Assembly: GCF_036321535.1 (NCBI RefSeq)
Contig: NC_087440.1
Coordinates: forward strand, 32,178,001 to 32,242,000
Length of the DNA: 64,000 nucleotides
Origin: Camelus dromedarius
Lineage: Eukaryota
Direction: 5' to 3'
Below, one piece after another: positions 15,701 through 59,600 of this stretch (the stretch's first letter is position 1; each line of letters begins with the position of its first letter). The notes under the pieces were generated by a model. That model ran no database searches. It saw only the letters and a program-made list of their open reading frames with translations, and was not told the origin of the DNA. The position numbers and the translations under genes were made by a program.

Positions 15701-18700
15701 ACCTCTTAAACCCGAACTTCCACTTAGAGGGAAAAGTACACTGGTTGCAAGTTTCTCTGTGGATTCCTGGGAGGGAATCACCCATCCTGTCAGCCAGCCA
15801 GAGGACCAGGGTAAAATAGACAGCTGCAGGATTCTTCCCAGGTTCTTACTGAGGTGCTCCACGTTCTGGTGTGTGCTGGCCGGACTTCTCGTCCCCTTGG
15901 AAGTGTGCCTCATGGCCCTCATCAGATTTTGTGTCAGTTTATGACGGCTGAAAGGAAGTCCATTTGACACAGCTCCTCCTTTGCTCTTTTCAGGCCAGAT
16001 GAGAGACGCTTTGCTGTCTTCTCCATCGCTGTCTCTTCAGATGGACGAGAAGTCCTCGGAGGGTGAGTGTTTGTGGGGATGTCTGCCTCACTTAATGGGA
16101 CTGGATATCTCTCAGAGACCAGCTCTGCTGCTACAGAGGCTGCACTGGACACATGTACCCAGGCGACTGTGGAGAACACCCAGGCTTTCTCCAGGGTCAG
16201 GGTTTATGAGTTGCTTCACCTCTTGTTCACCCTTCACCCAGCATAAGATGGGAGGTCTCAAACCTCCTGGCAAACACAGCTGACCCTTCTCCCATCTTCT
16301 GTTTAAGAAGGAACAAGGGCTTGCCCCTCCTCAGGGCTTCTCTGCAGCTTCCCCAGAACACATACAGCCTTGGTCCTCTTGGTGTTGGCTCCAGAGCCCT
16401 TTTTATCCCCTCCCTTTCAGGGCCAATGATGGCTGCCTGTATGTCTTTGATCGAGAACAGAACCGGCGTACCCTTCAGGTATTGCTTCCGAGACTTCGAG
16501 CCTCTGCCTCCTGGCTCTTGGCCTATTGGAAGACCTAGAAAGAGATCATAGGCATCCTGGCCTCTTTCTCCCCTAGATTGAGTCCCATGAGGATGATGTG
16601 AACGCAGTGGCCTTTGCTGACATAAGCTCCCAAATCCTGTTCTCTGGTGGTGACGACGCCATCTGCAAAGTGTGGGATCGACGCACTATGCGGGAAGATG
16701 ACCCCAAGCCCGTGGGCGCACTGGCTGGACACCAGGACGGCATCACCTTCATTGACAGCAAGGTGGGCCTGGAGGCAGGACCACACAGCCAGGCTACTGA
16801 GGTTCTGGTTCTCCAGGAGGGCATCAAAGTGGATGGGTGTGGGAATTCACCAGGCTCCTCATTAGCCAAGGTTTGCAAGAGGTGGAGTTTAGGGAAGAGG
16901 CTTAAGCCAGGAAACGTGAGATCCATTGGTATCTGCCACTCCTCCAGAAGCAGAGCAGGGCTTTCTGTACAAGAAAAGTAGAAGACAGTCTGATCCAGGA
17001 TAGACAAGGAGTCCAGCCAGCACCCTGGGCAAAGAAAGGGAAACTCTGCCAGGGGTAGAGGTCTGTGGTGAGGCCCGTTTGGATAAAGAAAGAGGCAACC
17101 AAAGTTAAAGGATTGGTGTTCTTACCTGTCAGCTGGGGAAAGGGAGCTGGACTGACAGACACCGACATTTGCAAGCTCCGATGCTTCATTATCCATCTTG
17201 GGATTCACAGGGTGATGCCCGGTATCTCATCTCCAACTCCAAGGACCAGACCATCAAGCTCTGGGATATACGGCGCTTTTCTAGCCGGGAAGGCATGGAA
17301 GCCTCGCGCCAGGCTGCCACACAGCAAAACTGGGACTACCGCTGGCAGCAGGTGCCCAAAAAAGGTGAGAGTGGAAGTAGAACCTGAGATCCTGAGAGTG
17401 CAGGGCCGGGGGTGGTAGCTAAAATATTTAAGCCCTGTTCAGGCTTGGCATGGGCACAGTGGATGGGGCTGTAGCCTGGAGCCAAAGTTCTGGAGACCTC
17501 CCCTGACACTCCCTTGCCAAGCTTTTGATAACTCTGTGTTTGCTGAACTGTGGGAGAGCCAGGGGTTCCCAGTGCACAGGCTGGGGATCACTCAGAACCA
17601 AGGAGTACAAAAGTATTTCAGGGTCTTAACAACCAGCAGAGCTCTGTTGGTGAATATCAGCTGACTATTAGGAGGGGAAAGAGCCACCAGTTGGGAATTG
17701 GAAAGGTGATTGTCCGTGAGCATTGATCTTTGCTAAGGACCAGTGATACGGAGAATTCAGACTCCCTAACCTAGGGCTCGCCCTGCATCCCTACCCAGCT
17801 TGGCGGAAGCTGAAGCTCCCAGGGGACAGTTCCTTGATGACCTACCGGGGCCACGGGGTGCTGCACACCCTCATCCGCTGCCGATTCTCCCCTGCCCATA
17901 GCACCGGCCAGCAGTTCATCTACAGTGGCTGCTCCACCGGCAAAGTGGTCGGTAAGGATTGTGTCAGAACTGGGGGCCTCAGGAAGGGCAGGAAGGTTTC
18001 TCTGGCATTCCTCCTGTAGCCACTAGTGACCACCTTAAAAAAAAACCAGTGACACCTACAAGTGAAATTTAATTTAGCCTGGGGCAAGAGAGGCTTAACC
18101 AGAGAAATAGAAAACATTCTACTCATCNNNNNNNNNNNNNNNNNNNNNNNNNNNNNNNNNNNNNNNNNNNNNNNNNNNNNNNNNNNNNNNNNNNNNNNNN
18201 NNNNNNNNNNNNNNNNNNNNNNNNNNNNNNNNNNNNNNNNNNNNNNNNNNNNNNNNNNNNNNNNNGAGATACTGGGACTTGAACCCAGGACCTCATGCAT
18301 GCTAAGCATGTGCTCTACCACTGAACTATACCCACCCCCTCTCCGTCAACATTTTAAATTAAGAAAAGGAACCTAGAATTCTAGTCAGTGAATATAATCA
18401 ATTACTAAAAATATACTCAGCTCTGTTTTTTAGCCAGTTGAGGGAAGAGATTGCAGATGAAAGGTAGGTGGAAACAGAGACAAAAAGAATGAAACACAAA
18501 GACACAGCATTTAGTAAAGGGTGTTGTACAGCCACTGAAGCAGGGTGACTGCACGAAAAGAAACACAAACACAGCCACAGGTCGAAGGAGTCTAAGACAG
18601 TTCCACGCCCAGGGAGGCCTCAGATGGAGGCCCATCCAGGGAGAGAGGAAGGTACACCCACATGCAGATAAGGGACAGCGGGTTCACACGTCTGTGTAGA

Positions 18701-24494: not shown

Positions 24495-24952
24495 CAGGGA
24501 TCAGCAAACGACAGCCCTCCTGTGGCCAGTGTTTGTATGGCCTGAGAGCTAAGAAATGGTTTCACATTTTTTAATGGTTGAAAAAAAAATCAAAGAATAT
24601 GTTTTTAAAATTTTTTACTGAAGTGTTGATTTACAATGTTTCAGGTATACAGCAAAGTGAGTCAGTTACACATATATATACATACATATTTTATCTTTTC
24701 AGATTATTTTCCATTAGATGTTATTACAAGAAATTGAATATAGTTCCCTGTGGTCCCTGTTGTGAAGAATATTTCATGACATGAAATTCAAGTGCCAGTG
24801 TCCATAAAGTTTTATAGGAACCAGCCATGCTAATTCATTTAGGTATAGCTGTTAACCTGCTGCAATGGTAGAGTTGAGTAGTTGCTATAGGCACTGTATA
24901 GCCCACAAAGCATAAAATATTTACTATCTGGTCTTTTACAGAAAAGACCCTG
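24495..24952. mobile_element. hAT-Charlie non-autonomous DNA transposon (MER58-like) with a nested L1 3' fragment at 24601-24764
   Basis: CAGGGATCAGCAAAC...ACCCTG termini; degenerate 8-bp TSD CTCTAAAT/ATCTAAAC. The nested L1 piece is flanked by the TSD AAGAATAT (24593-24600 and 24765-24772). Confidence 0.75.
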
Positions 24953-28784: not shown

Positions 28785-30858
28785 TCAGGTATTTCCATTG
28801 GTGGGACCAACCCACTGGGTGATTTGGGCATTGAGCTGCTGGTTGGTCCAATCTTCCCGGATGTCATCAAGGTGGCAGTCAAAGTCCACAAGGTGCTGGT
28901 GGGCCCGGCCCTCCAGTAATGCTCCTACCATCTGCCGTGACTCTTCCCAGTCCCTCCACATCACTCTGAAATAATAACCCCCATGGAGGTCAAACCCAGC
29001 AGGCAGTGGGGCCAGACAATTGGCAGAGGTTAGGGTCCAGAGAAGGACCCTTGGGGCAGAACCAAGGACAGAGGAGGCCCAGGAGCTGTGGGCTTCCAAG
29101 AAGAGGTAGAGGGAGTGGGGCACTCACAAGTTCTTGTCCTTGGGGACCCAGCGGAGACCATGGTTCTCTAGGACGATAACTGGGGGCACGTGAGGCTGGG
29201 GCACCAGTTTCTGATTATCCAACTGTGTGGACAGGGAAGGGCAGTTGAGGGTTTCAGGGATGCCCCTTCCTACTTTCTTTCNNNNNNNNNNNNNNNNNNN
29301 NNNNNNNNNNNNNNNNNNNNNNNNNNNNNNNNNNNNNNNNNNNNNNNNNNNNNNNNNNNNNNNNNNNNNNNNNNNNNNNNNNNNNNNNNNNNNNNNNNNN
29401 NNNNNNNNNNNNNNNNNNNNNNNNNNNNNCACATCCATCTGAGCTGGGCATCCCAGATCCCATAGACATGGACCCAGTGATGGCCTTTCTGTGTAGCTGG
29501 CCTAGGCGCATCAGGCCTGCTTGATGTTTCGTGCATGGCTGCTTGATGCTTGAGTGCTGTGGGAAACAGGAGCTCAGACAAAGCTGGTGAGAGTGAAAAT
29601 CTAAGATGGTCTTTTTAGAGAGTAATTTGGCATAACCACTCAGATTTATACTGTATATTATGTATGCTTATCTAGAATTTCTACTTACAAAGAATTTATT
29701 GTAATAATAGAACAGTGTATGTAATCACCAAAAAATTGGAAACAACCTCAATGTTTAATGTAAGGCATTAAGGTACATCCATATTCATACTATATAACTG
29801 TTAGGGTAAGGTAGATATTGGTGTAGAGATGGAAGGATGTCAGATATTTATTAAGGAGGGAAAAGCAAATTACAGAACAGTATGATTTGATCCAGATACA
29901 TGATTACTATATAAGTAGATAACTTTTTCTATATACAGTTGACCCTTGAACAACAAAGAGGTTAGGGCACAGACCCTCCAGCAGTTGAAAATCCACAGAT
30001 AACTTTACAGTTGGGCCTTCCCTATTCTGGATTCCACACAGATTCAACCGCTGCGGATCCCACTCAGTGAAAAAGTTCTGCCTATTAGTGGCCCCCCACA
30101 GTTCAAACCCTTGTCATTCCATGGTCAACTGTATATGTAAAAAGAAACTCCCTTTTTGATAAGTTGCTGGTTGGACTTCGTCTGTGTTCTTTCAGCACTT
30201 GGGGGACAACTCAATAAGTGTCAGCCTGTCCTTATTGAAACTCATTTGTCCTTCCCACTACCATGGCAGCTCCTCCAGGAAAGTATGTTTCTTTGTATTC
30301 CGTCACTGCAGTACCCATCCTAGTGCCTGGTGTGCAGTGCCTACTCCTAAGCTTTCGATGAAGGAAAGATGGAAGGAATGACCAAAAGGGGTTCTCTTGA
30401 CCCCACCCCACCCCCAATAACCCTTAGCCTTCTGCCTCTGGCTACCCAACTCACCTCTGATCGTCCAAAGCTGCATTGGCATGGTAGTACCCAGCCACTA
30501 CCAGCCCGGCCTGGGCGCCCCACACATCCACCTGCCATGGGAAAGGGGCCATCAGTAACCCGCCCTGTGGGTGCGCACTATTGCCAAGAGGCCAGGGATG
30601 GGCTTGGGCTAGGGGTATTAGGGGGGTTCGCGATGGTCAATGGGCGTCCAGAGGCGGCACCTGGTTGAGAGCGACCTCCAGCATGACAGACAGGGCCAGG
30701 TGGCTGTGGAATAGGGGCACACAGTCGGTGAGGCACAGGCATTCTCCCGACCGCGGCGCCGGCGCCAGCAGTAGCCCGTTGACAGCAGCGTGCGGATACC
30801 GGGCGGCGTGCAGGCACATCTTCACGTAGGCCTGGGCAGAGATCTCCACCTCCCCCAT
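28785..30858 (-). CDS. EMC9: ER membrane protein complex subunit 9 (about 206 aa); one coding exon hidden in an N gap
   Basis: Minus-strand exons 30858-30661 (MGEVEISAQAYVKMCLHAARYP...), 30531-30455 (VDVWGAQAGLVVAGYYHAN...), 29222-29128 (LDNQKLVPQP...), 28965-28785 (VMWRDWEES...NGNT*). Phase requires a further 3n+1-nt exon (70 nt in the ortholog) between 30455 and 29222, which is not visible. Minus-strand AATAAA at 28750-28755. Confidence 0.95.
29282..29429. other. Assembly gap (148 N); other gaps at 18128-18265, 54410-54545 and 54839-54970
   Basis: N runs visible in the sequence. Confidence 1.
29936..30131. mobile_element. TcMar-Tigger MITE (Tigger2-like) in an EMC9 intron
   Basis: Terminal inverted repeats CAGTTGACC...GGTCAACTG with TA duplications on both sides. 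Confidence 0.85.
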
Positions 30859-53235: not shown

Positions 53236-53738
53236 CAAATTGCTGTATCCCTTATCTCTTAAACTAGGTTCTAAGCACCCTGAAGGTAGGTGCCCCTACT
53301 TTATCATGTTTGTGCCCCAATGTGAACGCTTACGAACATTGACAATATACATACAGTGATTGAAACAACTTGTAAGTATCATGTGGAAGTCAGTTTAGCC
53401 AAGCTCTGTGGAATAGGGACAGGGAACACTGGAATTCAAGAGAGCAGAGTTCCCAACCAGGCTGTGACTAGGACAGCCTAGTGTGTGGTCTGGGAGAAAC
53501 AGTCTATACAGGCCCCTGTTTTCTCATCTGTAAAGGCAAAGCTTGGACTAGGTTTGGAAATCCCTTTCAGATTTGATATTCTGTGATTGTAAATTTAGGG
53601 CAATCGCACTTCATTTGACAAATACTTGCGGAGCTAAGTTTCAGGCACTAATGGAAAAAATAAGACCCAAGTGTCCAGAGTTCTTAGATTGAAAAAACAA
53701 AATAAAATAGGGTCAGCTCAGCTGTAAAAAGTGCTGAG

Positions 53739-55330
53739 TTTTTTTTTTAAATGAACTACTGTTGATTTACAATATTGTGGAGACTTGGCCCTAAACCTAA
53801 CACTACCTTAAACCTATCCCGAGGCCTAACCCTAACCCTAAAACTGAACCTAACCTAAACCCTTACCCCTAAACATAACCCTATCCCTTAACTCTAACCC
53901 TAACCCCTAACCCTAACTGACCTTAAACCTAATCCTAACCCCTAACCCTAAAACTAACCCTATCACCTAATCCTGACCCTAACCAAAAAAAACAAAAAAA
54001 AAATTTTACAGTAGTGTCTTAATTTCCAGTATATATATATACATATATATGTATATGGAGTCTTTTTCAGATTCTTTTCCATTATAGGTTATTGCAAGAT
54101 ATTGAATATATTTCCTTGTGCTATACAGTAAATCCTTGGTTATCTATTTTACATGTAGTGGTGTGTATCTGTTAATCCTATACTCCCAGTTTATCCCTCC
54201 CTCACTCTCTTTCCCCTGGGAACCATTAGTTTGTTTTCTATGTCTTTGAGTCAGTTCTTATTTTATAAGTTCATTTGTATTATTTTTTTAGATTCCACAT
54301 ATAAGTGATATACAATGTTTGTCTTTGTCTGACTTACTTCACTTAGTATGATAATCTCTGGGTCCGTCCATGTTGCTGTAAATGGATGGGATTTCATTTT
54401 TTGTGGCTGNNNNNNNNNNNNNNNNNNNNNNNNNNNNNNNNNNNNNNNNNNNNNNNNNNNNNNNNNNNNNNNNNNNNNNNNNNNNNNNNNNNNNNNNNNN
54501 NNNNNNNNNNNNNNNNNNNNNNNNNNNNNNNNNNNNNNNNNNNNNATGATCATTGAGGTGCATGTATCTTTTTGAATTAGTCTTTGTCTTTTCTGCATAT
54601 ATACCCAGGAGGGGGATTGCTGGATCATATGGTAAATCTATTTTTAGTTTTTTAAGAAACCTCCATACTATTTTCCATAGTGGCTGTACCAATTTACATT
54701 CGCACCAACAGTATAGGAGGGTTTCCTTTTCTCCACAGTCTCTCTAGCATTTATTATTTGTAGACTAATATTAAATTTTACTTTTTAAAAAAATTTTATT
54801 ATTTTTTAAATTGCAGTATTTGTAGATTTTTTTGATGGNNNNNNNNNNNNNNNNNNNNNNNNNNNNNNNNNNNNNNNNNNNNNNNNNNNNNNNNNNNNNN
54901 NNNNNNNNNNNNNNNNNNNNNNNNNNNNNNNNNNNNNNNNNNNNNNNNNNNNNNNNNNNNNNNNNNNNNNTTCTGCCCATTTTTTGATTGAGTTTTTTGT
55001 TTTTTTGATATTGAGTTGTAAGAGCTGCCTGTATATTTTGGAAATTAAGCCCTTGTTGGTTGCATTATTGCAAAACCTCCCAGTCTGTAGGTTGCCTTTT
55101 CATTTTGGGGGTTTCCTTTGCTGTGCAAAAGCTTGTAAGTTTGATTAAGTCCTACCTGTTTATTTTTGCTTTTATTTCTTTTGCCTTAGGAGACTGATCT
55201 AAGGAAGTATTGCTAAGATTTATGTCAGATAATGTTTTGCCTATGTTTTCTTCTAGGAGTTTTATGGTGTCCTGTCTTACATTTAAGTTTTTAAGTCATT
55301 TTGAGTTTATTTTTGTGTATGATGTGAAGA
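53739..55330 (-). mobile_element. LINE-1 3' end (ORF2 C-terminus plus 3' UTR), antisense, interrupted by a telomere-like insert and two N gaps
   Basis: Minus-strand peptides [31 protein letters not shown] and FTATWTDPEIIILSEVSQ are L1 ORF2 C-terminal motifs. Typical 3' UTR TTTTCAGATTCTTTTCCATTATAGG; poly(T) at 53739-53748. Confidence 0.9.
53789..53984 (+). repeat. Degenerate interstitial telomeric-like (CCCTAA)n tract
   Basis: About 200 bp of CCCTAA, CCTAAA, CCTTAA, CCCTAT and CCCTGA hexamer variants, followed by A8CA10. Confidence 0.9.
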
Positions 55331-55699
55331 GCTGAGTCTTAAAGAGGCAAAGCATGCCCTGGAGTCGAGGCTGGGAAGGACATTCTAGGACAGAGAAATG
55401 GCTGTGCAAAGGCAGGAGGCATGGGGAAATTCAGGATATTTGTGACTGCAACCATACAACTTATGCTACACAAAGAAATGTTTGAGACAAACGGCTTTTG
55501 TATGCTGAGAAGTATGCTCTGTGCCCAACAAAGCAAAAGTCTGTTTCAGCCAGGATAACATTCACAACTGGAAAACAGCCAGGTGAGAAATGCCCACAAC
55601 CTAAATTGTTCAGGTTTAGGAAATGACTCGGCAAGTCCTCTCACTGCTTCCTATGAGATCTGACTTACTCCGCATCAGTCTGTGACGGCTCCAAGGCCG

Positions 55700-56680
55700 C
55701 CTCCCACGGCTTCTATCTCCACAGCTCACCCTAGGCCCTAGGCTGGGCACAAAAGCGGATCAATCGCTACTCGGTGGGATTCGAGGTGGGGGTGGGGGTG
55801 GAGAACAAGGTCTAAACTCAGGTCAGGCGCCCAGAAGAGGGCCTGGCGGTTGTCCCCAGGATGACCCGACCTCCCGGGCTAGTTGAAGCGCCTTTGTTAC
55901 CAGGCTCACTGCAGGGGAAGCCTGGGGTTTGCTCCCCGCTCATTGGTCTGCAGAGAAGCGCCTCCGAGGACCCGCTGTTACCGAGGCGAGGACGAGAGCC
56001 TATTGGTCAGGACACCTCACAATGGCCCCCCGGCCACGCAGGGTTCTTCCCATTGGTTCGCTGCCTGCCTCGGGAGACCCTTATTGCCTAGAACACAGGC
56101 CTGCTACTTGGCGCGCCCTGGAACGAGCGCCCCCCGGCTGAGCCCTGTTCTTCATTGGCTGCTCTGGGGGCCGCTATCTAATGAGGAGCGAGGCGCAGAG
56201 CCCCCCGGGCACTCTCTCCCTGCAGTAGGATCTAGCCCTGCTGGAGGGGGACCCGCCCGCGACGGCAGGAGCCAAAGCTGTGCAAAGGCCAGGAGCCCAG
56301 CATCTCTGAGGAGGACACCTGTTCTCCGTGGGGACCTGAACTGGATCGCAGCGCAGGCCTCCCAGCGTGAAGCTCTGCATCTCCGACTTGAAACTCAACC
56401 CGGCAACCTCCAGTAAGTTCAAAACACCCAGGCATTGCGTGAACCAGCTCAGGGCTGACGGAGAAGGTGTCCCAACTCCTGTGTATCCAGGCTACATCTC
56501 CATTTACTTATTCCCTTAATCATTTATCCACCCATTGTTTATCGGTTCATTTGTTTGGCATTCTATGGGTCCACCCGCTCCGCTGCATCCTTCTCTCTGT
56601 CAGTATTAGGAAATCCCGTGCCCTGAAGGCTTCGTCGGACTGAGATCCAAGAGCGGTGGAGACAAGTGAAAGCCCGGAGG
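55700..56680 (+). promoter_or_regulatory. REC8 CpG-island promoter and 5' UTR
   Basis: CpG-rich tract. ATTGG boxes at 55942, 56002, 56052 and 56154; donor GTAAGT at 56413; acceptor ending 56603. Confidence 0.75.
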
Positions 56681-56684
56681 GACC

Positions 56685-59600
56685 ATGTTCTACTATCCCA
56701 ACGTGCTCCAGCGCCACACCGGCTGCTTCGCCACCATCTGGTAAGGGCTGGCCGGGCCAGGGTGGGCAAGCCAGGAGGGACACCCAGGGATCCCAGCTGA
56801 AGGGCTCCCCTCTCCATCCTCACCCCACTTCCTCCCTCCAGGCTGGCAGCCACGCGCGGCAGCCGGTTGGTGAAGCGTGAATACCTGAAGGTGAATGTGG
56901 TGAAGACCTGGTAAGGCCCAGGGAAGGGAGGAGCGGCCTGGGGCCAGGGTGGGTCAGGGGATGGACTGGGCCGGGCCGGGCTGGGCTGTGGGGCTGGTCC
57001 TTGACGCAGTGGGTGATCAGGGCGTGCTGTTTCCCCAGCGAGGAAATCCTCAATTATGTGCTGGTACGCGTGGAGCCCCCGCTGCCCAGTCTGCCGAGGC
57101 CCCGCTTCTCCCTCTATCTGTCAGCCCAACTCCAAATCGGCATCATCCGGGTCTACTTTCAACAATGCCAGTACCTCGTAGGTAAGGCTGGGAAGGCTTC
57201 GAGGCAGGGCAGAGCGGAGGGTCCCTGGCCTGGGCTGGCGCTCTACCTTACCCTCCCTGCCCGCAGAGGACATCCAGCACATCCTGGAGCGCCTGCACCG
57301 GGCCCAGCTGCAGATTCGCATTGATATGGTGGAGACTGAACTGTGAGTATCCTCTGGGGACTGGAACCACCAGCCTTTGGCAGGGAGCCTTCCTGCTTGA
57401 CCTCAGCCCATCTTGGCCTCAGTACTTGATAGCTCACATTCTCCCTCAGACCCAGCCTGCTGCTTCCTAACCACCTGGCCATGATGGAGACTCTGGAAGA
57501 AGCTCCAGACCCTTTTTTTGGGATGATGTCTGTGGATCCCAGACTCCCCAGTCCCTTCAATATCCCTCAGGTAGGTCTCATCCCCTGGGACACCTGATGA
57601 GTGGACACTGCAGAGGGGTGTGCTGTTCCTGTGCCAGTTGTTCAGGGAAGGGCGGGAACCTGCTACAGCTCTGCCCCATAGGAGTTGGCGCAGGGCGACT
57701 GTCATGGGGGACCCATCCAGACAAGCCTGCTGCACTTCCCTATTCAGGACCAACCTAGAGGCAGCTCTTGTCGCCACTCTTCTCCATGCTATTCCCACAG
57801 TTGAAGCCTTAATCCAGACCCTGGTGTCTCTCAGCACCAGGTTTCCTTACCCATGTTCTTGTCCATCCATTTCTAATACCACTACAGCTTAGACAGTGTT
57901 ACCCCCTTTCTTCAAAGACGTTGCCAGTGGTTCCTCACTGCAAACAAAATACTAACATTTAAGGCTCTCCGTGTCCTGGCCCAGAGGGAGCCATCCCTAG
58001 ACATCCTCTCAGCGCATCCCCTGGGCATCTTTGGCTCCCAAACACCAGTCTGGCCCCTATGTCCCAAAGATACCACATTTACTTTTCTGTTTGAGCTATT
58101 TCCCTAGCCCTTAATGATCACTCCTCATTCTTTTACAGACTTCACTCAAATGCTACCCTTTCCCATGAAGCCTTTATCCCACTCTTAGCCAGAATCAAAT
58201 GTTGTTCTGGAACTGAGCACATCACTTGGGTCATGTTTTATCCTTAGTGTTGACTCTGGCTGGGGTCATATACTATTCGTCTCCCCACTAGACCATACAC
58301 TCCTTAACATCAAGAACATTTCCTGTTCCCTCTGTCCCCCACAACACCTGACATAAGGATGTAGTACTTCTTTCACAGACAAGTTGACACAGACTAGATA
58401 ATTGGGTGGGGGCAGGAAAAGGAGGAAAGGAAACCAGATAGTGAGTGGGTTCACTGCATACTAGTGTCAGTGCCACAGAATCGGGCATTTAGGGGTATCA
58501 CTGTCCACTGTCTGACTAGGGCTATGAAAGCGGGGAATTCGGGGGCTGAAGCTGAACCCTATCTCTTGTCCCCAATCCCTTCCCAAAGATTCGACACCTC
58601 TTAGAGGCTGTGACCCCAGAGAGAGTTCTTGAGGAGATTCCTCCTGAAGTCCCTACAGAGCCCAGGAAGCCAGGTGAGCAGAGAGAGACATCCTTCTGGT
58701 GAGAGGCAAAGAGCCAAGAGCTATAGAAATAACTCCCTTTGAGCTTCTCTCAGGAGCCAGGCCGTGTGTGTATAACTGCATAACTGTCTCACATGAGTCC
58801 TGTGCAACTGGAGTCCTTCCCATTTTACAGATGAGGAAAGTGCAGCCCATAGTGGTTAAGCAATGTATCCTGGGTCAGCTTGCCAGGGTCTGACTAAGAA
58901 CCTAGATTGAGCTGACTCCAGAGTCCATGCTTTCGCCTTACCACATGGGTATGGGAACTCAGAAAGAAGCAGAGGGGCTGGTGTGACTTCCCTGCCCCTG
59001 CAGACAGGATTCCGGTCACTGTGGTGTCTCCTGAAGCCATCACGATCCTGGAGGAGGAACCCATACGTATGCTGCAAATCGAGGTGAGCTGTCCCCCTGC
59101 AGAGACCAAGGCCCAGGTCTTGCTTCTGGTGGCCTAGCCCCCTGCATCCACTTCTCTCTGCCCCCGGAGTCCTGCCTTCTCTACCTCCATTCCCCCACCC
59201 CTGCCCCTGGCCCCAAGCACCCCTGGGCTCCCTTGGCCCAGCCCGGCCTTGTGGCATGTGCCTCTCAAACAGAAGTGGAATTGAGCCCCTTCTCCTTTTT
59301 CTTCCTCTTCTGACAGGGTGAAAAAGACCTCCCAGAGATCAGCCGCCGAGACTTGGACCTGCTGATTGCTGAGGAAGACGAAGCCATCTTGTTAGAGGAA
59401 CGTCGTCGGCTGGGTAGGCCTGTCCGGGAAGGTAGGGCCTACCCAGCGCTGGATGGTCAGGCCTCCGCACAGGCAGTCTGGGCCTGGGCCATGCTCCCAT
59501 CTCTTCTCTTCTGTGTTCTGAGCCCTGATCCTCTCTCTGCAGAGGCCAAGGAGGAGCTCCGGGCCCCAGAGGAGGAGATCGCAGTTCCCCCACCCTCACC

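What the first reader, a model, noticed from the sequence alone, without database searches (positions are those of the whole stretch)
53766..54018. Telomere-repeat tract with an A tail inserted into an L1 3' end upstream of REC8
Seen: an antisense L1 3' end starts normally (T10-AAATGAACTACTGTTGATTTACAATATTGTG). It is then interrupted by GAGACTTGG, about 200 bp of degenerate (CCCTAA)n and A8CA10, and resumes with TTTACAGTAGTGTCTTAATTTCCAG. The flanks TTTACAATATTGTG (53766-53779) and TTTACAGTAGTGTC (54005-54018) match at 11 of 14 positions, like an aged target-site duplication. The tail points opposite to the L1's own poly(A). A sub-motif CCCTAAAACT recurs about 110 bp apart. Established: interstitial telomeric sequences usually arise by telomerase-assisted double-strand-break repair and have no poly(A) tail. 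Inference: this may be a retrotransposed, polyadenylated C-strand subtelomeric RNA, or a member of an unnamed camelid retroelement built from telomeric hexamers. It sits about 1.7 kb from the REC8 CpG island and could bind TRF1/TRF2 or form a G-quadruplex on the minus strand.
Basis: partly seen in the sequence, partly recalled or inferred. Interest (0 to 1): 0.7.

Follow-up and report, generated by a model that had tools for sequence, protein, structure and literature searches.

The report
Telomere-like repeat retrocopy inside an L1
A decayed 196-bp stretch of telomere-type repeats with an A tail and a 14-bp flank duplication sits inside an old L1 upstream of REC8; it looks like a one-off reverse-transcribed copy of a C-rich telomere-like RNA, not a usual telomerase scar, and is probably functionless.

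Summary
A 5'-truncated L1 on the minus strand (53739-55326) has its own 14-bp target-site duplication. It is interrupted 26 bp from its tail by GAGACTTGG, 196 bp of degenerate (CCCTAA)n and A8CA10. The 14-mer TTTACAnTnnTGTn flanks the insert on both sides (11 of 14). Uninterrupted L1 copies, in this window and in public reads, carry it once, so it is a true duplication made by the insertion.

Best reading (about 0.55): a single retrocopy of a polyadenylated, C-rich, already degenerate telomere-like RNA, of the ARIA or ITS-transcript kind, made by LINE-type reverse transcription.
- For: tail orientation, the duplication, and 18% decay of the tract against about 10% for the older host L1.
- Against: no poly(A) signal and a non-canonical nick site.

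Main rival (about 0.25): telomerase-assisted break repair. That route is known to give duplications and filler, but it does not explain the A tail.

A retroelement family is not supported: there is no second copy in the window, no Pol III features, and reads on the first 80 bp are perfect telomere reads. It could not be tested genome-wide. The orthologous empty site and the source locus could not be checked either. Only five TRF-type sites remain and there is no canonical G-quadruplex motif. Modest interest.

The parts
53729..53742 (+). Left copy of the host L1's own target-site duplication (AAGTGCTGAGTTTT); its last Ts merge with the L1 tail
   Evidence: Matches 55327-55340 at 12 of 14 positions. 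The implied nick site is TCTT/AAAG, a usual L1 endonuclease site (sequence plus established knowledge).
53739..53779 (-). Terminal 3' piece of the host L1: its poly(A), read as T10, plus the last 31 bp of the 3' UTR
   Evidence: About 480 L1 reads deep in run X24. The read majority gives ATTGAAGTATAGTTGATTTACAATATTGTG. It is collinear with the paralogous L1 end at 24596-24752.
53766..53779 (+). Left copy of the insert's target-site duplication (TTTACAATATTGTG)
   Evidence: No variant reaching 10% of reads is listed for 53762-53779, so this copy agrees with the L1 read majority. Paralogous L1 contigs continue after 53779 with TTAATTTCA... or TCAGTTTCTGG... (table 5c). In this locus that sequence follows the second copy.
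53780..53788 (+). Nine non-telomeric, non-L1 bases (GAGACTTGG) at the insert's 5' junction
   Evidence: Read directly. Absent from intact L1 copies. No exact match of the 24-nt junction in the metagenome collection, which is uninformative.
53789..53984 (+). Degenerate (CCCTAA)n tract, about 32 units, C-rich strand on +
   Evidence: TRF gives period 6, 65% matches and 8% indels. It is 36 edits in 196 bp from a perfect repeat, spread evenly. It contains 5 TAACCCTAA sites and 10 perfect hexamers.
53985..54003 (+). A8CA10 tail at the 3' end of the C-rich strand
   Evidence: Only 9 A runs of 8 or more occur on this strand in 63.4 kb. The tail is not present in intact L1 copies.
54005..54018 (+). 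Right copy of the insert's target-site duplication (TTTACAGTAGTGTC)
   Evidence: Matches 53766-53779 at 11 of 14 positions. It is followed by TTAATTTCC, which is what follows the single copy in paralogous L1s.
54004..55326 (-). Body of the host L1 (rest of the 3' UTR and ORF2 from about residue 950), 5'-truncated, with two masked N runs left untouched
   Evidence: ORF2p residues 1149-1185 map to 54582-54692 and 964-1009 to 55155-55295. An L1-type YTKINSK motif reaches about 55326; I recognised this motif from memory. Read depth is in the thousands.
55327..55340 (+). Right copy of the host L1's own target-site duplication (AAGAGCTGAGTCTT)

Best explanation
The locus records two nested insertion events, and the second is best read as a one-off retrocopy.

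1. A 5'-truncated L1 of about 1.36 kb entered on the minus strand at a TCTT/AAAG site. It made a 14-bp duplication. This is shown by the sequence.
2. Later, a 224-bp piece entered the L1 3' UTR, 26 bp from the L1 tail. It duplicated 14 bp of L1 sequence. This is shown by comparison with intact L1 copies.
3. The piece is GAGACTTGG, then degenerate (CCCTAA)n, then an A tail.

Inferred mechanism: the piece is a retrocopy of an RNA whose sense strand was C-rich telomere-like repeats ending in an A tract. Such an RNA would be an ARIA-like transcript of an already degenerate interstitial or subtelomeric repeat. A LINE-type reverse transcriptase copied it from its A tract at a staggered break or nick. 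This corresponds to a class 1 templated sequence insertion, or orphan retrocopy.

The piece is not a telomerase product and not a mobile family. It now decays neutrally. I expect no function at REC8.
For: - **The duplication is real.** It is 14 bp, within the usual L1 size range. The paralog at 24596-24752 has TTTACAAT once. Paralogous L1 contigs run from 53779 straight into TTAATTTCA... (table 5c).
- **The A tail fits retroposition.** A8CA10 sits exactly at the 3' end of the C-rich strand, next to the right-hand duplicate. That is the orientation retroposition predicts. Chance adjacency is about 4e-4, and a chance flank match is 0.4%.
- **The tract looks older than the insertion.** It is 18.4% away from a perfect repeat. 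The host L1 must be older than the insert, yet it differs from the read-majority consensus at only about 12-13 of 130 covered positions, about 10%. The two duplications show similar decay (11/14 against 12/14). Simulated decay at 10% gives 0.113 +/- 0.022 edits per base. The template was therefore probably degenerate already, which telomerase synthesis does not predict.
- **A suitable RNA class exists.** C-rich telomeric RNAs from interstitial repeats are about 50% polyadenylated in CHO cells (PMC13403905).
- **The mechanism has precedent.** LINE-1 copying of stray polyadenylated intronic or intergenic RNA, with duplication and A tail, is described as class 1 TSIP (PMC5110952).
Against: - No AATAAA, ATTAAA or listed variant occurs anywhere in the insert.
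- The implied first nick, 5'-GTAAA/TCAAC on the minus strand, is far from the TTTT/AA preference (sequence).
- The age argument rests on few sites, and tandem repeats may mutate faster than unique DNA.
- No source locus, orthologous empty site or second example could be examined.
- None of the four ITS papers I searched by keyword describes telomere-repeat retrocopies, so the prior is low.
- The A run could in principle have grown by slippage from TAAAA-type variants.
Confidence: 0.55

Rival explanations
1. This is an ordinary interstitial telomeric sequence. Telomerase, or capture of telomeric DNA, patched a staggered double-strand break in the L1. Fill-in of the overhangs gave the 14-bp duplication. 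GAGACTTGG and the A/T run are filler. A hybrid variant is also possible: an aborted LINE reverse transcription laid down the T run on the minus strand, and telomerase then extended it with GGTTAG repeats.
For: - This is the established origin of short interstitial telomeric sequences. Such insertions come with deletions, random additions (16-17% of loci) and duplications (4.6% in rodents, 16% in primates) (PMC2246262 Table 1).
- Duplications attributed to staggered breaks are also seen in horse (PMC7215372).
- The non-canonical nick site and the missing poly(A) signal fit a break-repair event better than classic L1 endonuclease action.
Against: - It needs a duplication plus additions at both junctions in a single event.
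- A 19-nt homopolymer is not what random filler looks like. It sits on exactly the strand and end that retroposition predicts.
- The telomeric repeats do not abut the 3' break end in register, because 19 Ts intervene. Register microhomology is seen at about 75% of loci (PMC2246262).
- The tract is more decayed (18%) than the older host L1 (about 10%).
- No TERC-like flank was found.
Confidence: 0.25
2. This is DNA-level capture. A pre-existing genomic fragment, made of an old degenerate interstitial telomeric sequence lying next to the A tail of some retroelement, was pasted into a staggered break by end joining.
For: It explains the pre-existing decay, the lack of a poly(A) signal and the non-canonical site. 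Capture of telomeric fragments is one of the two routes proposed in PMC2246262.
Against: The fragment would have to end exactly at the end of an A run and start 9 bp before the repeats. No donor is known. The A-tail orientation next to the duplicate would be a coincidence.
Confidence: 0.1
3. This is a member of an unnamed retroelement family built of telomeric hexamers, with a shared 5' end (GAGACTTGG...) and an A tail.
For: Only the retroposon-like anatomy of this one copy.
Against: - No other copy or junction occurs in 64 kb.
- There is no tRNA-like part and no B box within 2 mismatches in the insert.
- No Rfam family matches.
- At about 0.8x raw coverage, reads on 53800-53857 are perfect (CCCTAA)n. 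At positions 53812 and 53824 only 4-7 reads keep this locus's letters. That bounds close relatives to a few copies at most.
- The scan's notes hold one other telomeric finding in this genome, and it is a perfect array.
Confidence: 0.04
4. This is an assembly mis-join or collapsed telomeric reads.
For: Direct spanning reads could not be seen. The reads tool skipped 53859-54062 as repeat, and the unique flank had 0-1x depth.
Against: 20 runs from 8 studies and 3 organism labels hold 0.91-0.96 of the sampled 31-mers across 53300-54400, and the insert makes up a fifth of that stretch. The L1 flanks are collinear with an exact 14-bp overlap, which a random mis-join would not produce.
Confidence: 0.02

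Closest known systems
Class 1 templated sequence insertions, or orphan retrocopies, made by LINE-1 ORF2p acting on stray polyadenylated RNA (Onozawa and Aplan, PMC5110952)
   Same: Target-site duplication of at least 5 bp (here 14 bp), a 3' A tract of 10-40 (here 19), a short non-genic insert, and a single copy.
   Different: No poly(A) signal 10-30 nt upstream and no TTTT/A insertion site. The template is telomere-type repeats, and that paper reports no TSIP containing telomere sequence.
Short interstitial telomeric sequences inserted by telomerase at double-strand breaks (Nergadze et al., PMC2246262; Santagostino et al., PMC7215372)
   Same: Telomeric hexamers appear in one step inside a pre-existing sequence, here a repetitive element. 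Duplication and short added sequences occur at the junctions. The length falls within the rodent range.
   Different: An A tail sits on the C-rich strand. The repeats are not in register with the break end. The decay exceeds that of the older host element.
TERC-ITS: telomeric repeats flanked by a fragment reverse-transcribed from telomerase RNA (PMC2246262, PMC8537989)
   Same: Non-telomeric letters accompany the telomeric tract, and an RNA-templated origin is proposed.
   Different: No telomerase RNA match at E of 10 or lower. The order here is C-rich repeats followed by an A run. As I recall it, telomerase RNA has a U run before its C-rich template, which is the opposite order.
ARIA and ARIA-like C-rich telomeric transcripts from interstitial repeats (Domingues-Silva et al. 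2026, PMC13403905)
   Same: An RNA of the sense and tailing required as template: CCCUAA repeats, about half of it polyadenylated in CHO cells despite no canonical signal in the repeat.
   Different: That work describes RNAs and does not describe genomic retrocopies. Nothing shows that such RNA exists in this species.

Membership tests
LINE-1-mediated retrocopy (class 1 templated insertion) | Target-site duplication of at least 5 bp flanking the insert | tested here: met
   14 bp, 11 of 14 identical. Intact L1 copies carry the motif once. Chance is 0.4%.
LINE-1-mediated retrocopy (class 1 templated insertion) | Untemplated 3' A tract of about 10-40 next to the downstream duplicate | tested here: met
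   A8CA10 at 53985-54003. It is absent from intact L1 copies. Whether it was untemplated cannot be known without the source.
LINE-1-mediated retrocopy (class 1 templated insertion) | Poly(A) signal 10-30 nt upstream of the tail | tested here: not met
   None of 13 signal hexamers occurs in 53780-53990. There is no 1-mismatch AATAAA or ATTAAA among hexamers starting at 53935-53983.
LINE-1-mediated retrocopy (class 1 templated insertion) | Insertion at a TTTT/A-like endonuclease site | tested here: not met
   The implied minus-strand nick is GTAAA/TCAAC (or AAAT/CAAC). The host L1's own site, TCTT/AAAG, does fit.
LINE-1-mediated retrocopy (class 1 templated insertion) | A source locus elsewhere with the same sequence | not testable with these tools
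   No searchable copy of this genome was available. Scans of the metagenome and prokaryote collections were blank and uninformative.
Telomerase-type short interstitial telomeric sequence | Telomeric hexamers inserted in one step into pre-existing sequence (empty orthologue or repeat consensus) | tested here: met
   Shown against paralogous L1 copies used as a stand-in for the repeat consensus. The orthologous empty site was not available.
Telomerase-type short interstitial telomeric sequence | Essentially exact TTAGGG units at birth | tested here: inconclusive
   The tract is now 18.4% from perfect, against about 10% decay of the older host L1. This leans against, but the site counts are small and repeat mutation rates are uncertain.
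Telomerase-type short interstitial telomeric sequence | Repeats start at the 3' break end, often in register with it | tested here: not met
   On the G-rich strand, 19 Ts lie between the L1 break end and the first GGTTAG. Nine unrelated bases lie at the other junction.
TERC-ITS | Flanking fragment homologous to telomerase RNA | tested here: inconclusive
   No telomerase RNA hit at E of 10 or lower in 53650-54120. A 9-nt flank is too short for the model to detect.
SINE-like retroelement family | Many dispersed copies sharing the 5' end, each with its own duplication | tested here: inconclusive
   One copy in 64 kb. Reads bound close relatives of 53800-53857 to a few copies. 53859-54062 was skipped by the tool, and no genome-wide search was possible.
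SINE-like retroelement family | Internal Pol III promoter or small-RNA-derived head | tested here: not met
   No tRNA-like structure. No B box within 2 mismatches inside 53780-54003. No Rfam family.

The most novel reading that the evidence does not exclude
The locus is one member of an unrecognised class of mammalian retroposed telomere-repeat elements. Under this reading, C-rich telomeric (ARIA-like) RNAs are recurrent LINE substrates, so a share of interstitial telomeric sequences arise by retroposition and not through telomerase. Copies would share 5' ends, A tails and individual duplications.
Probability: 0.05. Interest if true: 0.7.

Novelty: new variant of a known kind. Interest (0 to 1): 0.33.

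Why it matters
Interstitial telomeric sequences are read as scars of telomerase-assisted break repair. A tract with the marks of retroposition would add a second route: reverse transcription of C-rich telomeric RNA. It would also be genomic evidence that such RNA was tailed and available in a germ line. That would make a genome-wide census worthwhile, counting tracts with strand-specific A tails and duplications. The case rests on one decayed locus, with no empty site and no source. For REC8 regulation I see nothing that matters. The tract lies about 1.65 kb from the GC-rich promoter region, keeps five TRF-type sites and has no canonical G-quadruplex motif.

Tried and rejected
- **Read laying.**
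  - The unique left flank had 0-1x depth in the raw runs and none in the contig runs; the tool's filter drops records.
  - 53859-54062 was skipped as repeat. Junction-spanning reads, allele state and presence in organisms B and C at this locus therefore could not be read directly.
  - The call was still useful for the L1 consensus and for the joints in paralogous L1 copies.
  - Run X23 laid about 100-fold fewer L1 reads than X24 and gave little.
- **Collection scans.** Exact-pattern scans of the metagenome and prokaryote collections with the 5' junction and the 3' end were blank. Those collections do not hold this genome, so this says nothing.
- **Pfam.** Two ORF2 fragments gave no family. The solved-structure search gave the L1 ORF2p match instead.
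- **Rfam.** Only chance hits on the TA microsatellite.
- **Scan notes.** One other telomeric note in this genome, a perfect array, and no look-alike by sequence.
- **Nergadze 2004 (PMC515315).** Not held. Its classes are taken from the 2007 paper's summary.
- **Rejected: both flanks come from two independent L1s.** The flanks are collinear with an exact 14-bp overlap, and one outer duplication encloses both.
- **Rejected: a template jump of the host L1's own reverse transcription onto a G-rich RNA and back.** This needs an RNA with a 5' U run and a return to the same 14 nt.
- **Rejected: a purity gradient typical of a telomere-subtelomere junction.** The edits are even along the tract.
- **Higher-order repeat.** The 78-bp self-match (75%) is a multiple of the hexamer. 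I did not pursue it as a higher-order repeat.
- **N runs.** They were left untouched.

Full report
**1. Observation**

- T10 lies at 53739-53748, followed by AAATGAACTACTGTTGATTTACAATATTGTG up to 53779.
- GAGACTTGG follows at 53780-53788.
- A degenerate (CCCTAA)n tract runs from 53789 to 53984.
- A8CA10 lies at 53985-54003.
- TTTTACAGTAGTGTCTTAATTTCCAG... resumes at 54004.

Tandem Repeats Finder gives period 6, 32.3 copies, 65% matches and 8% indels for the tract. This is the only telomere-like tract in the window. All six matches to CCCTAACCCTAA with at most one mismatch lie in it, against 0.57 expected. It also holds 10 of the window's 17 CCCTAA hexamers.

**2. The host element**

The flanks belong to one L1 on the minus strand.
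- Minus-strand translations match solved L1 ORF2p at residues 1149-1185 (54582-54692, E 3e-12) and 964-1009 (55155-55295, E 8e-6). The two matches are collinear.
- L1-type ORF2 motifs, recognised from memory, run to about 55326.
- Raw reads pile on both flanks by the hundreds to thousands.
- The element has its own duplication: AAGTGCTGAGTTTT (53729-53742) against AAGAGCTGAGTCTT (55327-55340), 12 of 14. The nick site is TCTT/AAAG, a usual L1 endonuclease site.

It is therefore a 5'-truncated L1 of about 1.36 kb. The left 41 bp and the right 1.3 kb are parts of one insertion.

**3. The duplication is real**

No orthologous empty site was available, so I used other L1 copies.
- The L1 3' end at 24596-24752 has GTTGATTTACAATGT...TTCAGG, with the motif present once.
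- In the reads call, contigs of paralogous L1s run up to 53779 and continue with TTAATTTCATATGTACAGC... or TCAGTTTCTGGTGTCCAGC..., then rejoin at about 54075 (table 5c).
- In this locus TTAATTTCC follows the second 14-mer at 54019.
- The read majority agrees with the left copy, since no variant reaching 10% of reads is listed for 53762-53779.
- The right copy differs from the left at three positions.

Intact L1s thus carry TTTACAATATTGTG once, and this locus carries it twice, on either side of the insert. By chance, 11/14 or better within 20-bp flanks occurs at 13 of 3000 random sites.

**4. The tail**

A8CA10 sits exactly between the C-rich tract and the right duplicate, on the strand where the tract is C-rich. 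The window has nine A runs of 8 or more per strand. The chance of one at that point and strand is about 4e-4. Intact L1 copies have no A run there. The tail therefore came with the insert or grew at its end.

**5. What does not fit classic L1 retroposition**

- No poly(A) signal hexamer occurs anywhere in the insert.
- The first nick implied by the duplication is 5'-GTAAA/TCAAC on the minus strand, far from TTTT/AA.

Two of the four class 1 criteria of Onozawa and Aplan are therefore met: the duplication and the A tract. The other two, the signal and the site, are not (PMC5110952).

**6. Age and state of the tract**

- A wraparound alignment gives 36 edits in 196 bp from a perfect repeat, or 18.4%. 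The edits are evenly spread at 4-6 per 28 bp, so there is no purity gradient.
- The host L1 must be older than the insert. It differs from the read-majority letter at 4 of about 42 and 8-9 of 88 covered positions, about 10%.
- The two duplications are similarly decayed (12/14 and 11/14).
- Simulated decay of a perfect repeat at 10% gives 0.113 +/- 0.022 edits per base. The observed 0.184 corresponds to about 16-17%.

This suggests that the template was already degenerate when copied. That fits an RNA or DNA copy of an old repeat and does not fit fresh telomerase synthesis. The inference is only moderate, because the site counts are small and tandem repeats may mutate faster than unique DNA.

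**7. Literature**

- Interstitial telomeric sequences are held to arise in one step at double-strand breaks, by telomerase or by capture of telomeric DNA.
- The junctions show deletion (about 50%), random addition (16-17%) and duplication (4.6% in rodents, 16% in primates) (PMC2246262).
- Horse loci also show direct duplications, ascribed to staggered breaks (PMC7215372).
- None of these papers, nor the TERC-ITS paper (PMC8537989) or the review PMC6410037, mentions an A tail or a retropositional origin. I searched them by keyword and did not read them in full.
- A suitable template class exists. C-rich telomeric RNA (ARIA) from interstitial repeats is abundant and about half polyadenylated in CHO cells, although the repeat has no canonical signal (PMC13403905).

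**8. Other tests**

- There is no telomerase RNA or other Rfam match.
- As I recall it, telomerase RNA has a U run before its C-rich template. That is the opposite order to the C-rich-then-A arrangement here.
- There is no tRNA-like part and no B box in the insert.
- Family test by reads: at about 0.8x raw coverage (X24), the reads on 53800-53857 carry the perfect-repeat letter at every variant position. At 53812 and 53824 only 4-7 reads keep this locus's letters. Close relatives of this part number a few at most. Old, diverged relatives and the rest of the insert could not be tested.
- 20 runs from 8 studies and three organism labels hold at least 0.91 of the sampled words of 53300-54400. This argues against an assembly artefact. 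It shows the insert is shared by close relatives, which dates it only weakly.

**9. Mechanism and odds**

- **Retrocopy (about 0.55).** A polyadenylated or A-ended C-rich telomere-like RNA, already degenerate, was reverse-transcribed from its A tract at a staggered nick or break in the L1 3' UTR. This made the 14-bp duplication. The nine 5' bases are either the start of the template or junction filler.
  - Shown: the nested structure, the duplication, and the tail and its orientation.
  - Inferred: the RNA intermediate, its source and the enzyme.
- **Telomerase repair (about 0.25).** Telomerase-type repair with a duplication and filler on both sides, or an aborted LINE priming extended by telomerase.
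- **DNA capture (about 0.10).** Capture of an old tract together with a neighbouring A tail.
- **Family (about 0.04).**
- **Mis-assembly (about 0.02).**

**10. Function**

- Five TAACCCTAA sites remain.
- No G-quadruplex motif with loops of 7 or fewer exists on the G-rich strand. Motifs appear only with loops up to 12.
- The GC-rich REC8 promoter region starts near 55650, and the first coding exon is at 56685 (recognised from memory). The scan's notes on CHMP4A, TM9SF1 and MDP1 just beyond the window fit this neighbourhood as I recall it.
- I see no reason to expect a regulatory role.

**11. Verdict**

The feature is real and the anatomy was read correctly. The retrocopy reading is the best supported but unproven. 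The family and subtelomeric readings are unsupported. It is a new variant of known kinds: an interstitial telomeric sequence with retroposition marks. Interest is modest because it rests on one decayed locus. The decisive comparisons, an orthologous empty site and a source locus, need genome searches that these tools do not offer.

Noticed in passing
window 53729-53742 and 55327-55340: The host L1 has its own 14-bp target-site duplication (12 of 14) at a canonical TCTT/AAAG nick site. This gives a built-in age comparison for the nested insert.
   Followed up: yes
window 24596-24752: A second short antisense L1 3' end fragment of about 150 bp. Compared with the L1 end as I recall it, it lacks about 8 bp after TTTACAATGT. 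I used it as a paralogous empty site.
   Followed up: partly
window 54019-54060: Next to the insert, the host L1 3' UTR goes from TTAATTTCCAG straight into a (TA)n-rich stretch. Paralogous copies carry about 25 bp there (GTATACAGCAAAGTGAGTCAGTTACA). This looks like a small deletion or microsatellite takeover beside the insertion site.
   Followed up: no
window 18128-18265, 29282-29429, 54410-54545, 54839-54970: Four N runs of 132-148 bases, two of them inside the host L1.
   Followed up: no
window 55600-57300 and 56685: A GC-rich region (GC 0.56-0.68, CpG observed/expected 0.35-0.66) holds a first coding exon starting MFYYPNVLQRHTGCFATIW at 56685 on the + strand. I recognised it as REC8 from memory. 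It is only a moderate CpG island by observed/expected ratio.
   Followed up: partly
run X23: This run is labelled as whole-genome DNA of organism A. It laid about 100-fold fewer L1 reads than X24 for a similar number of letters read, so it may hold little host DNA.
   Followed up: no
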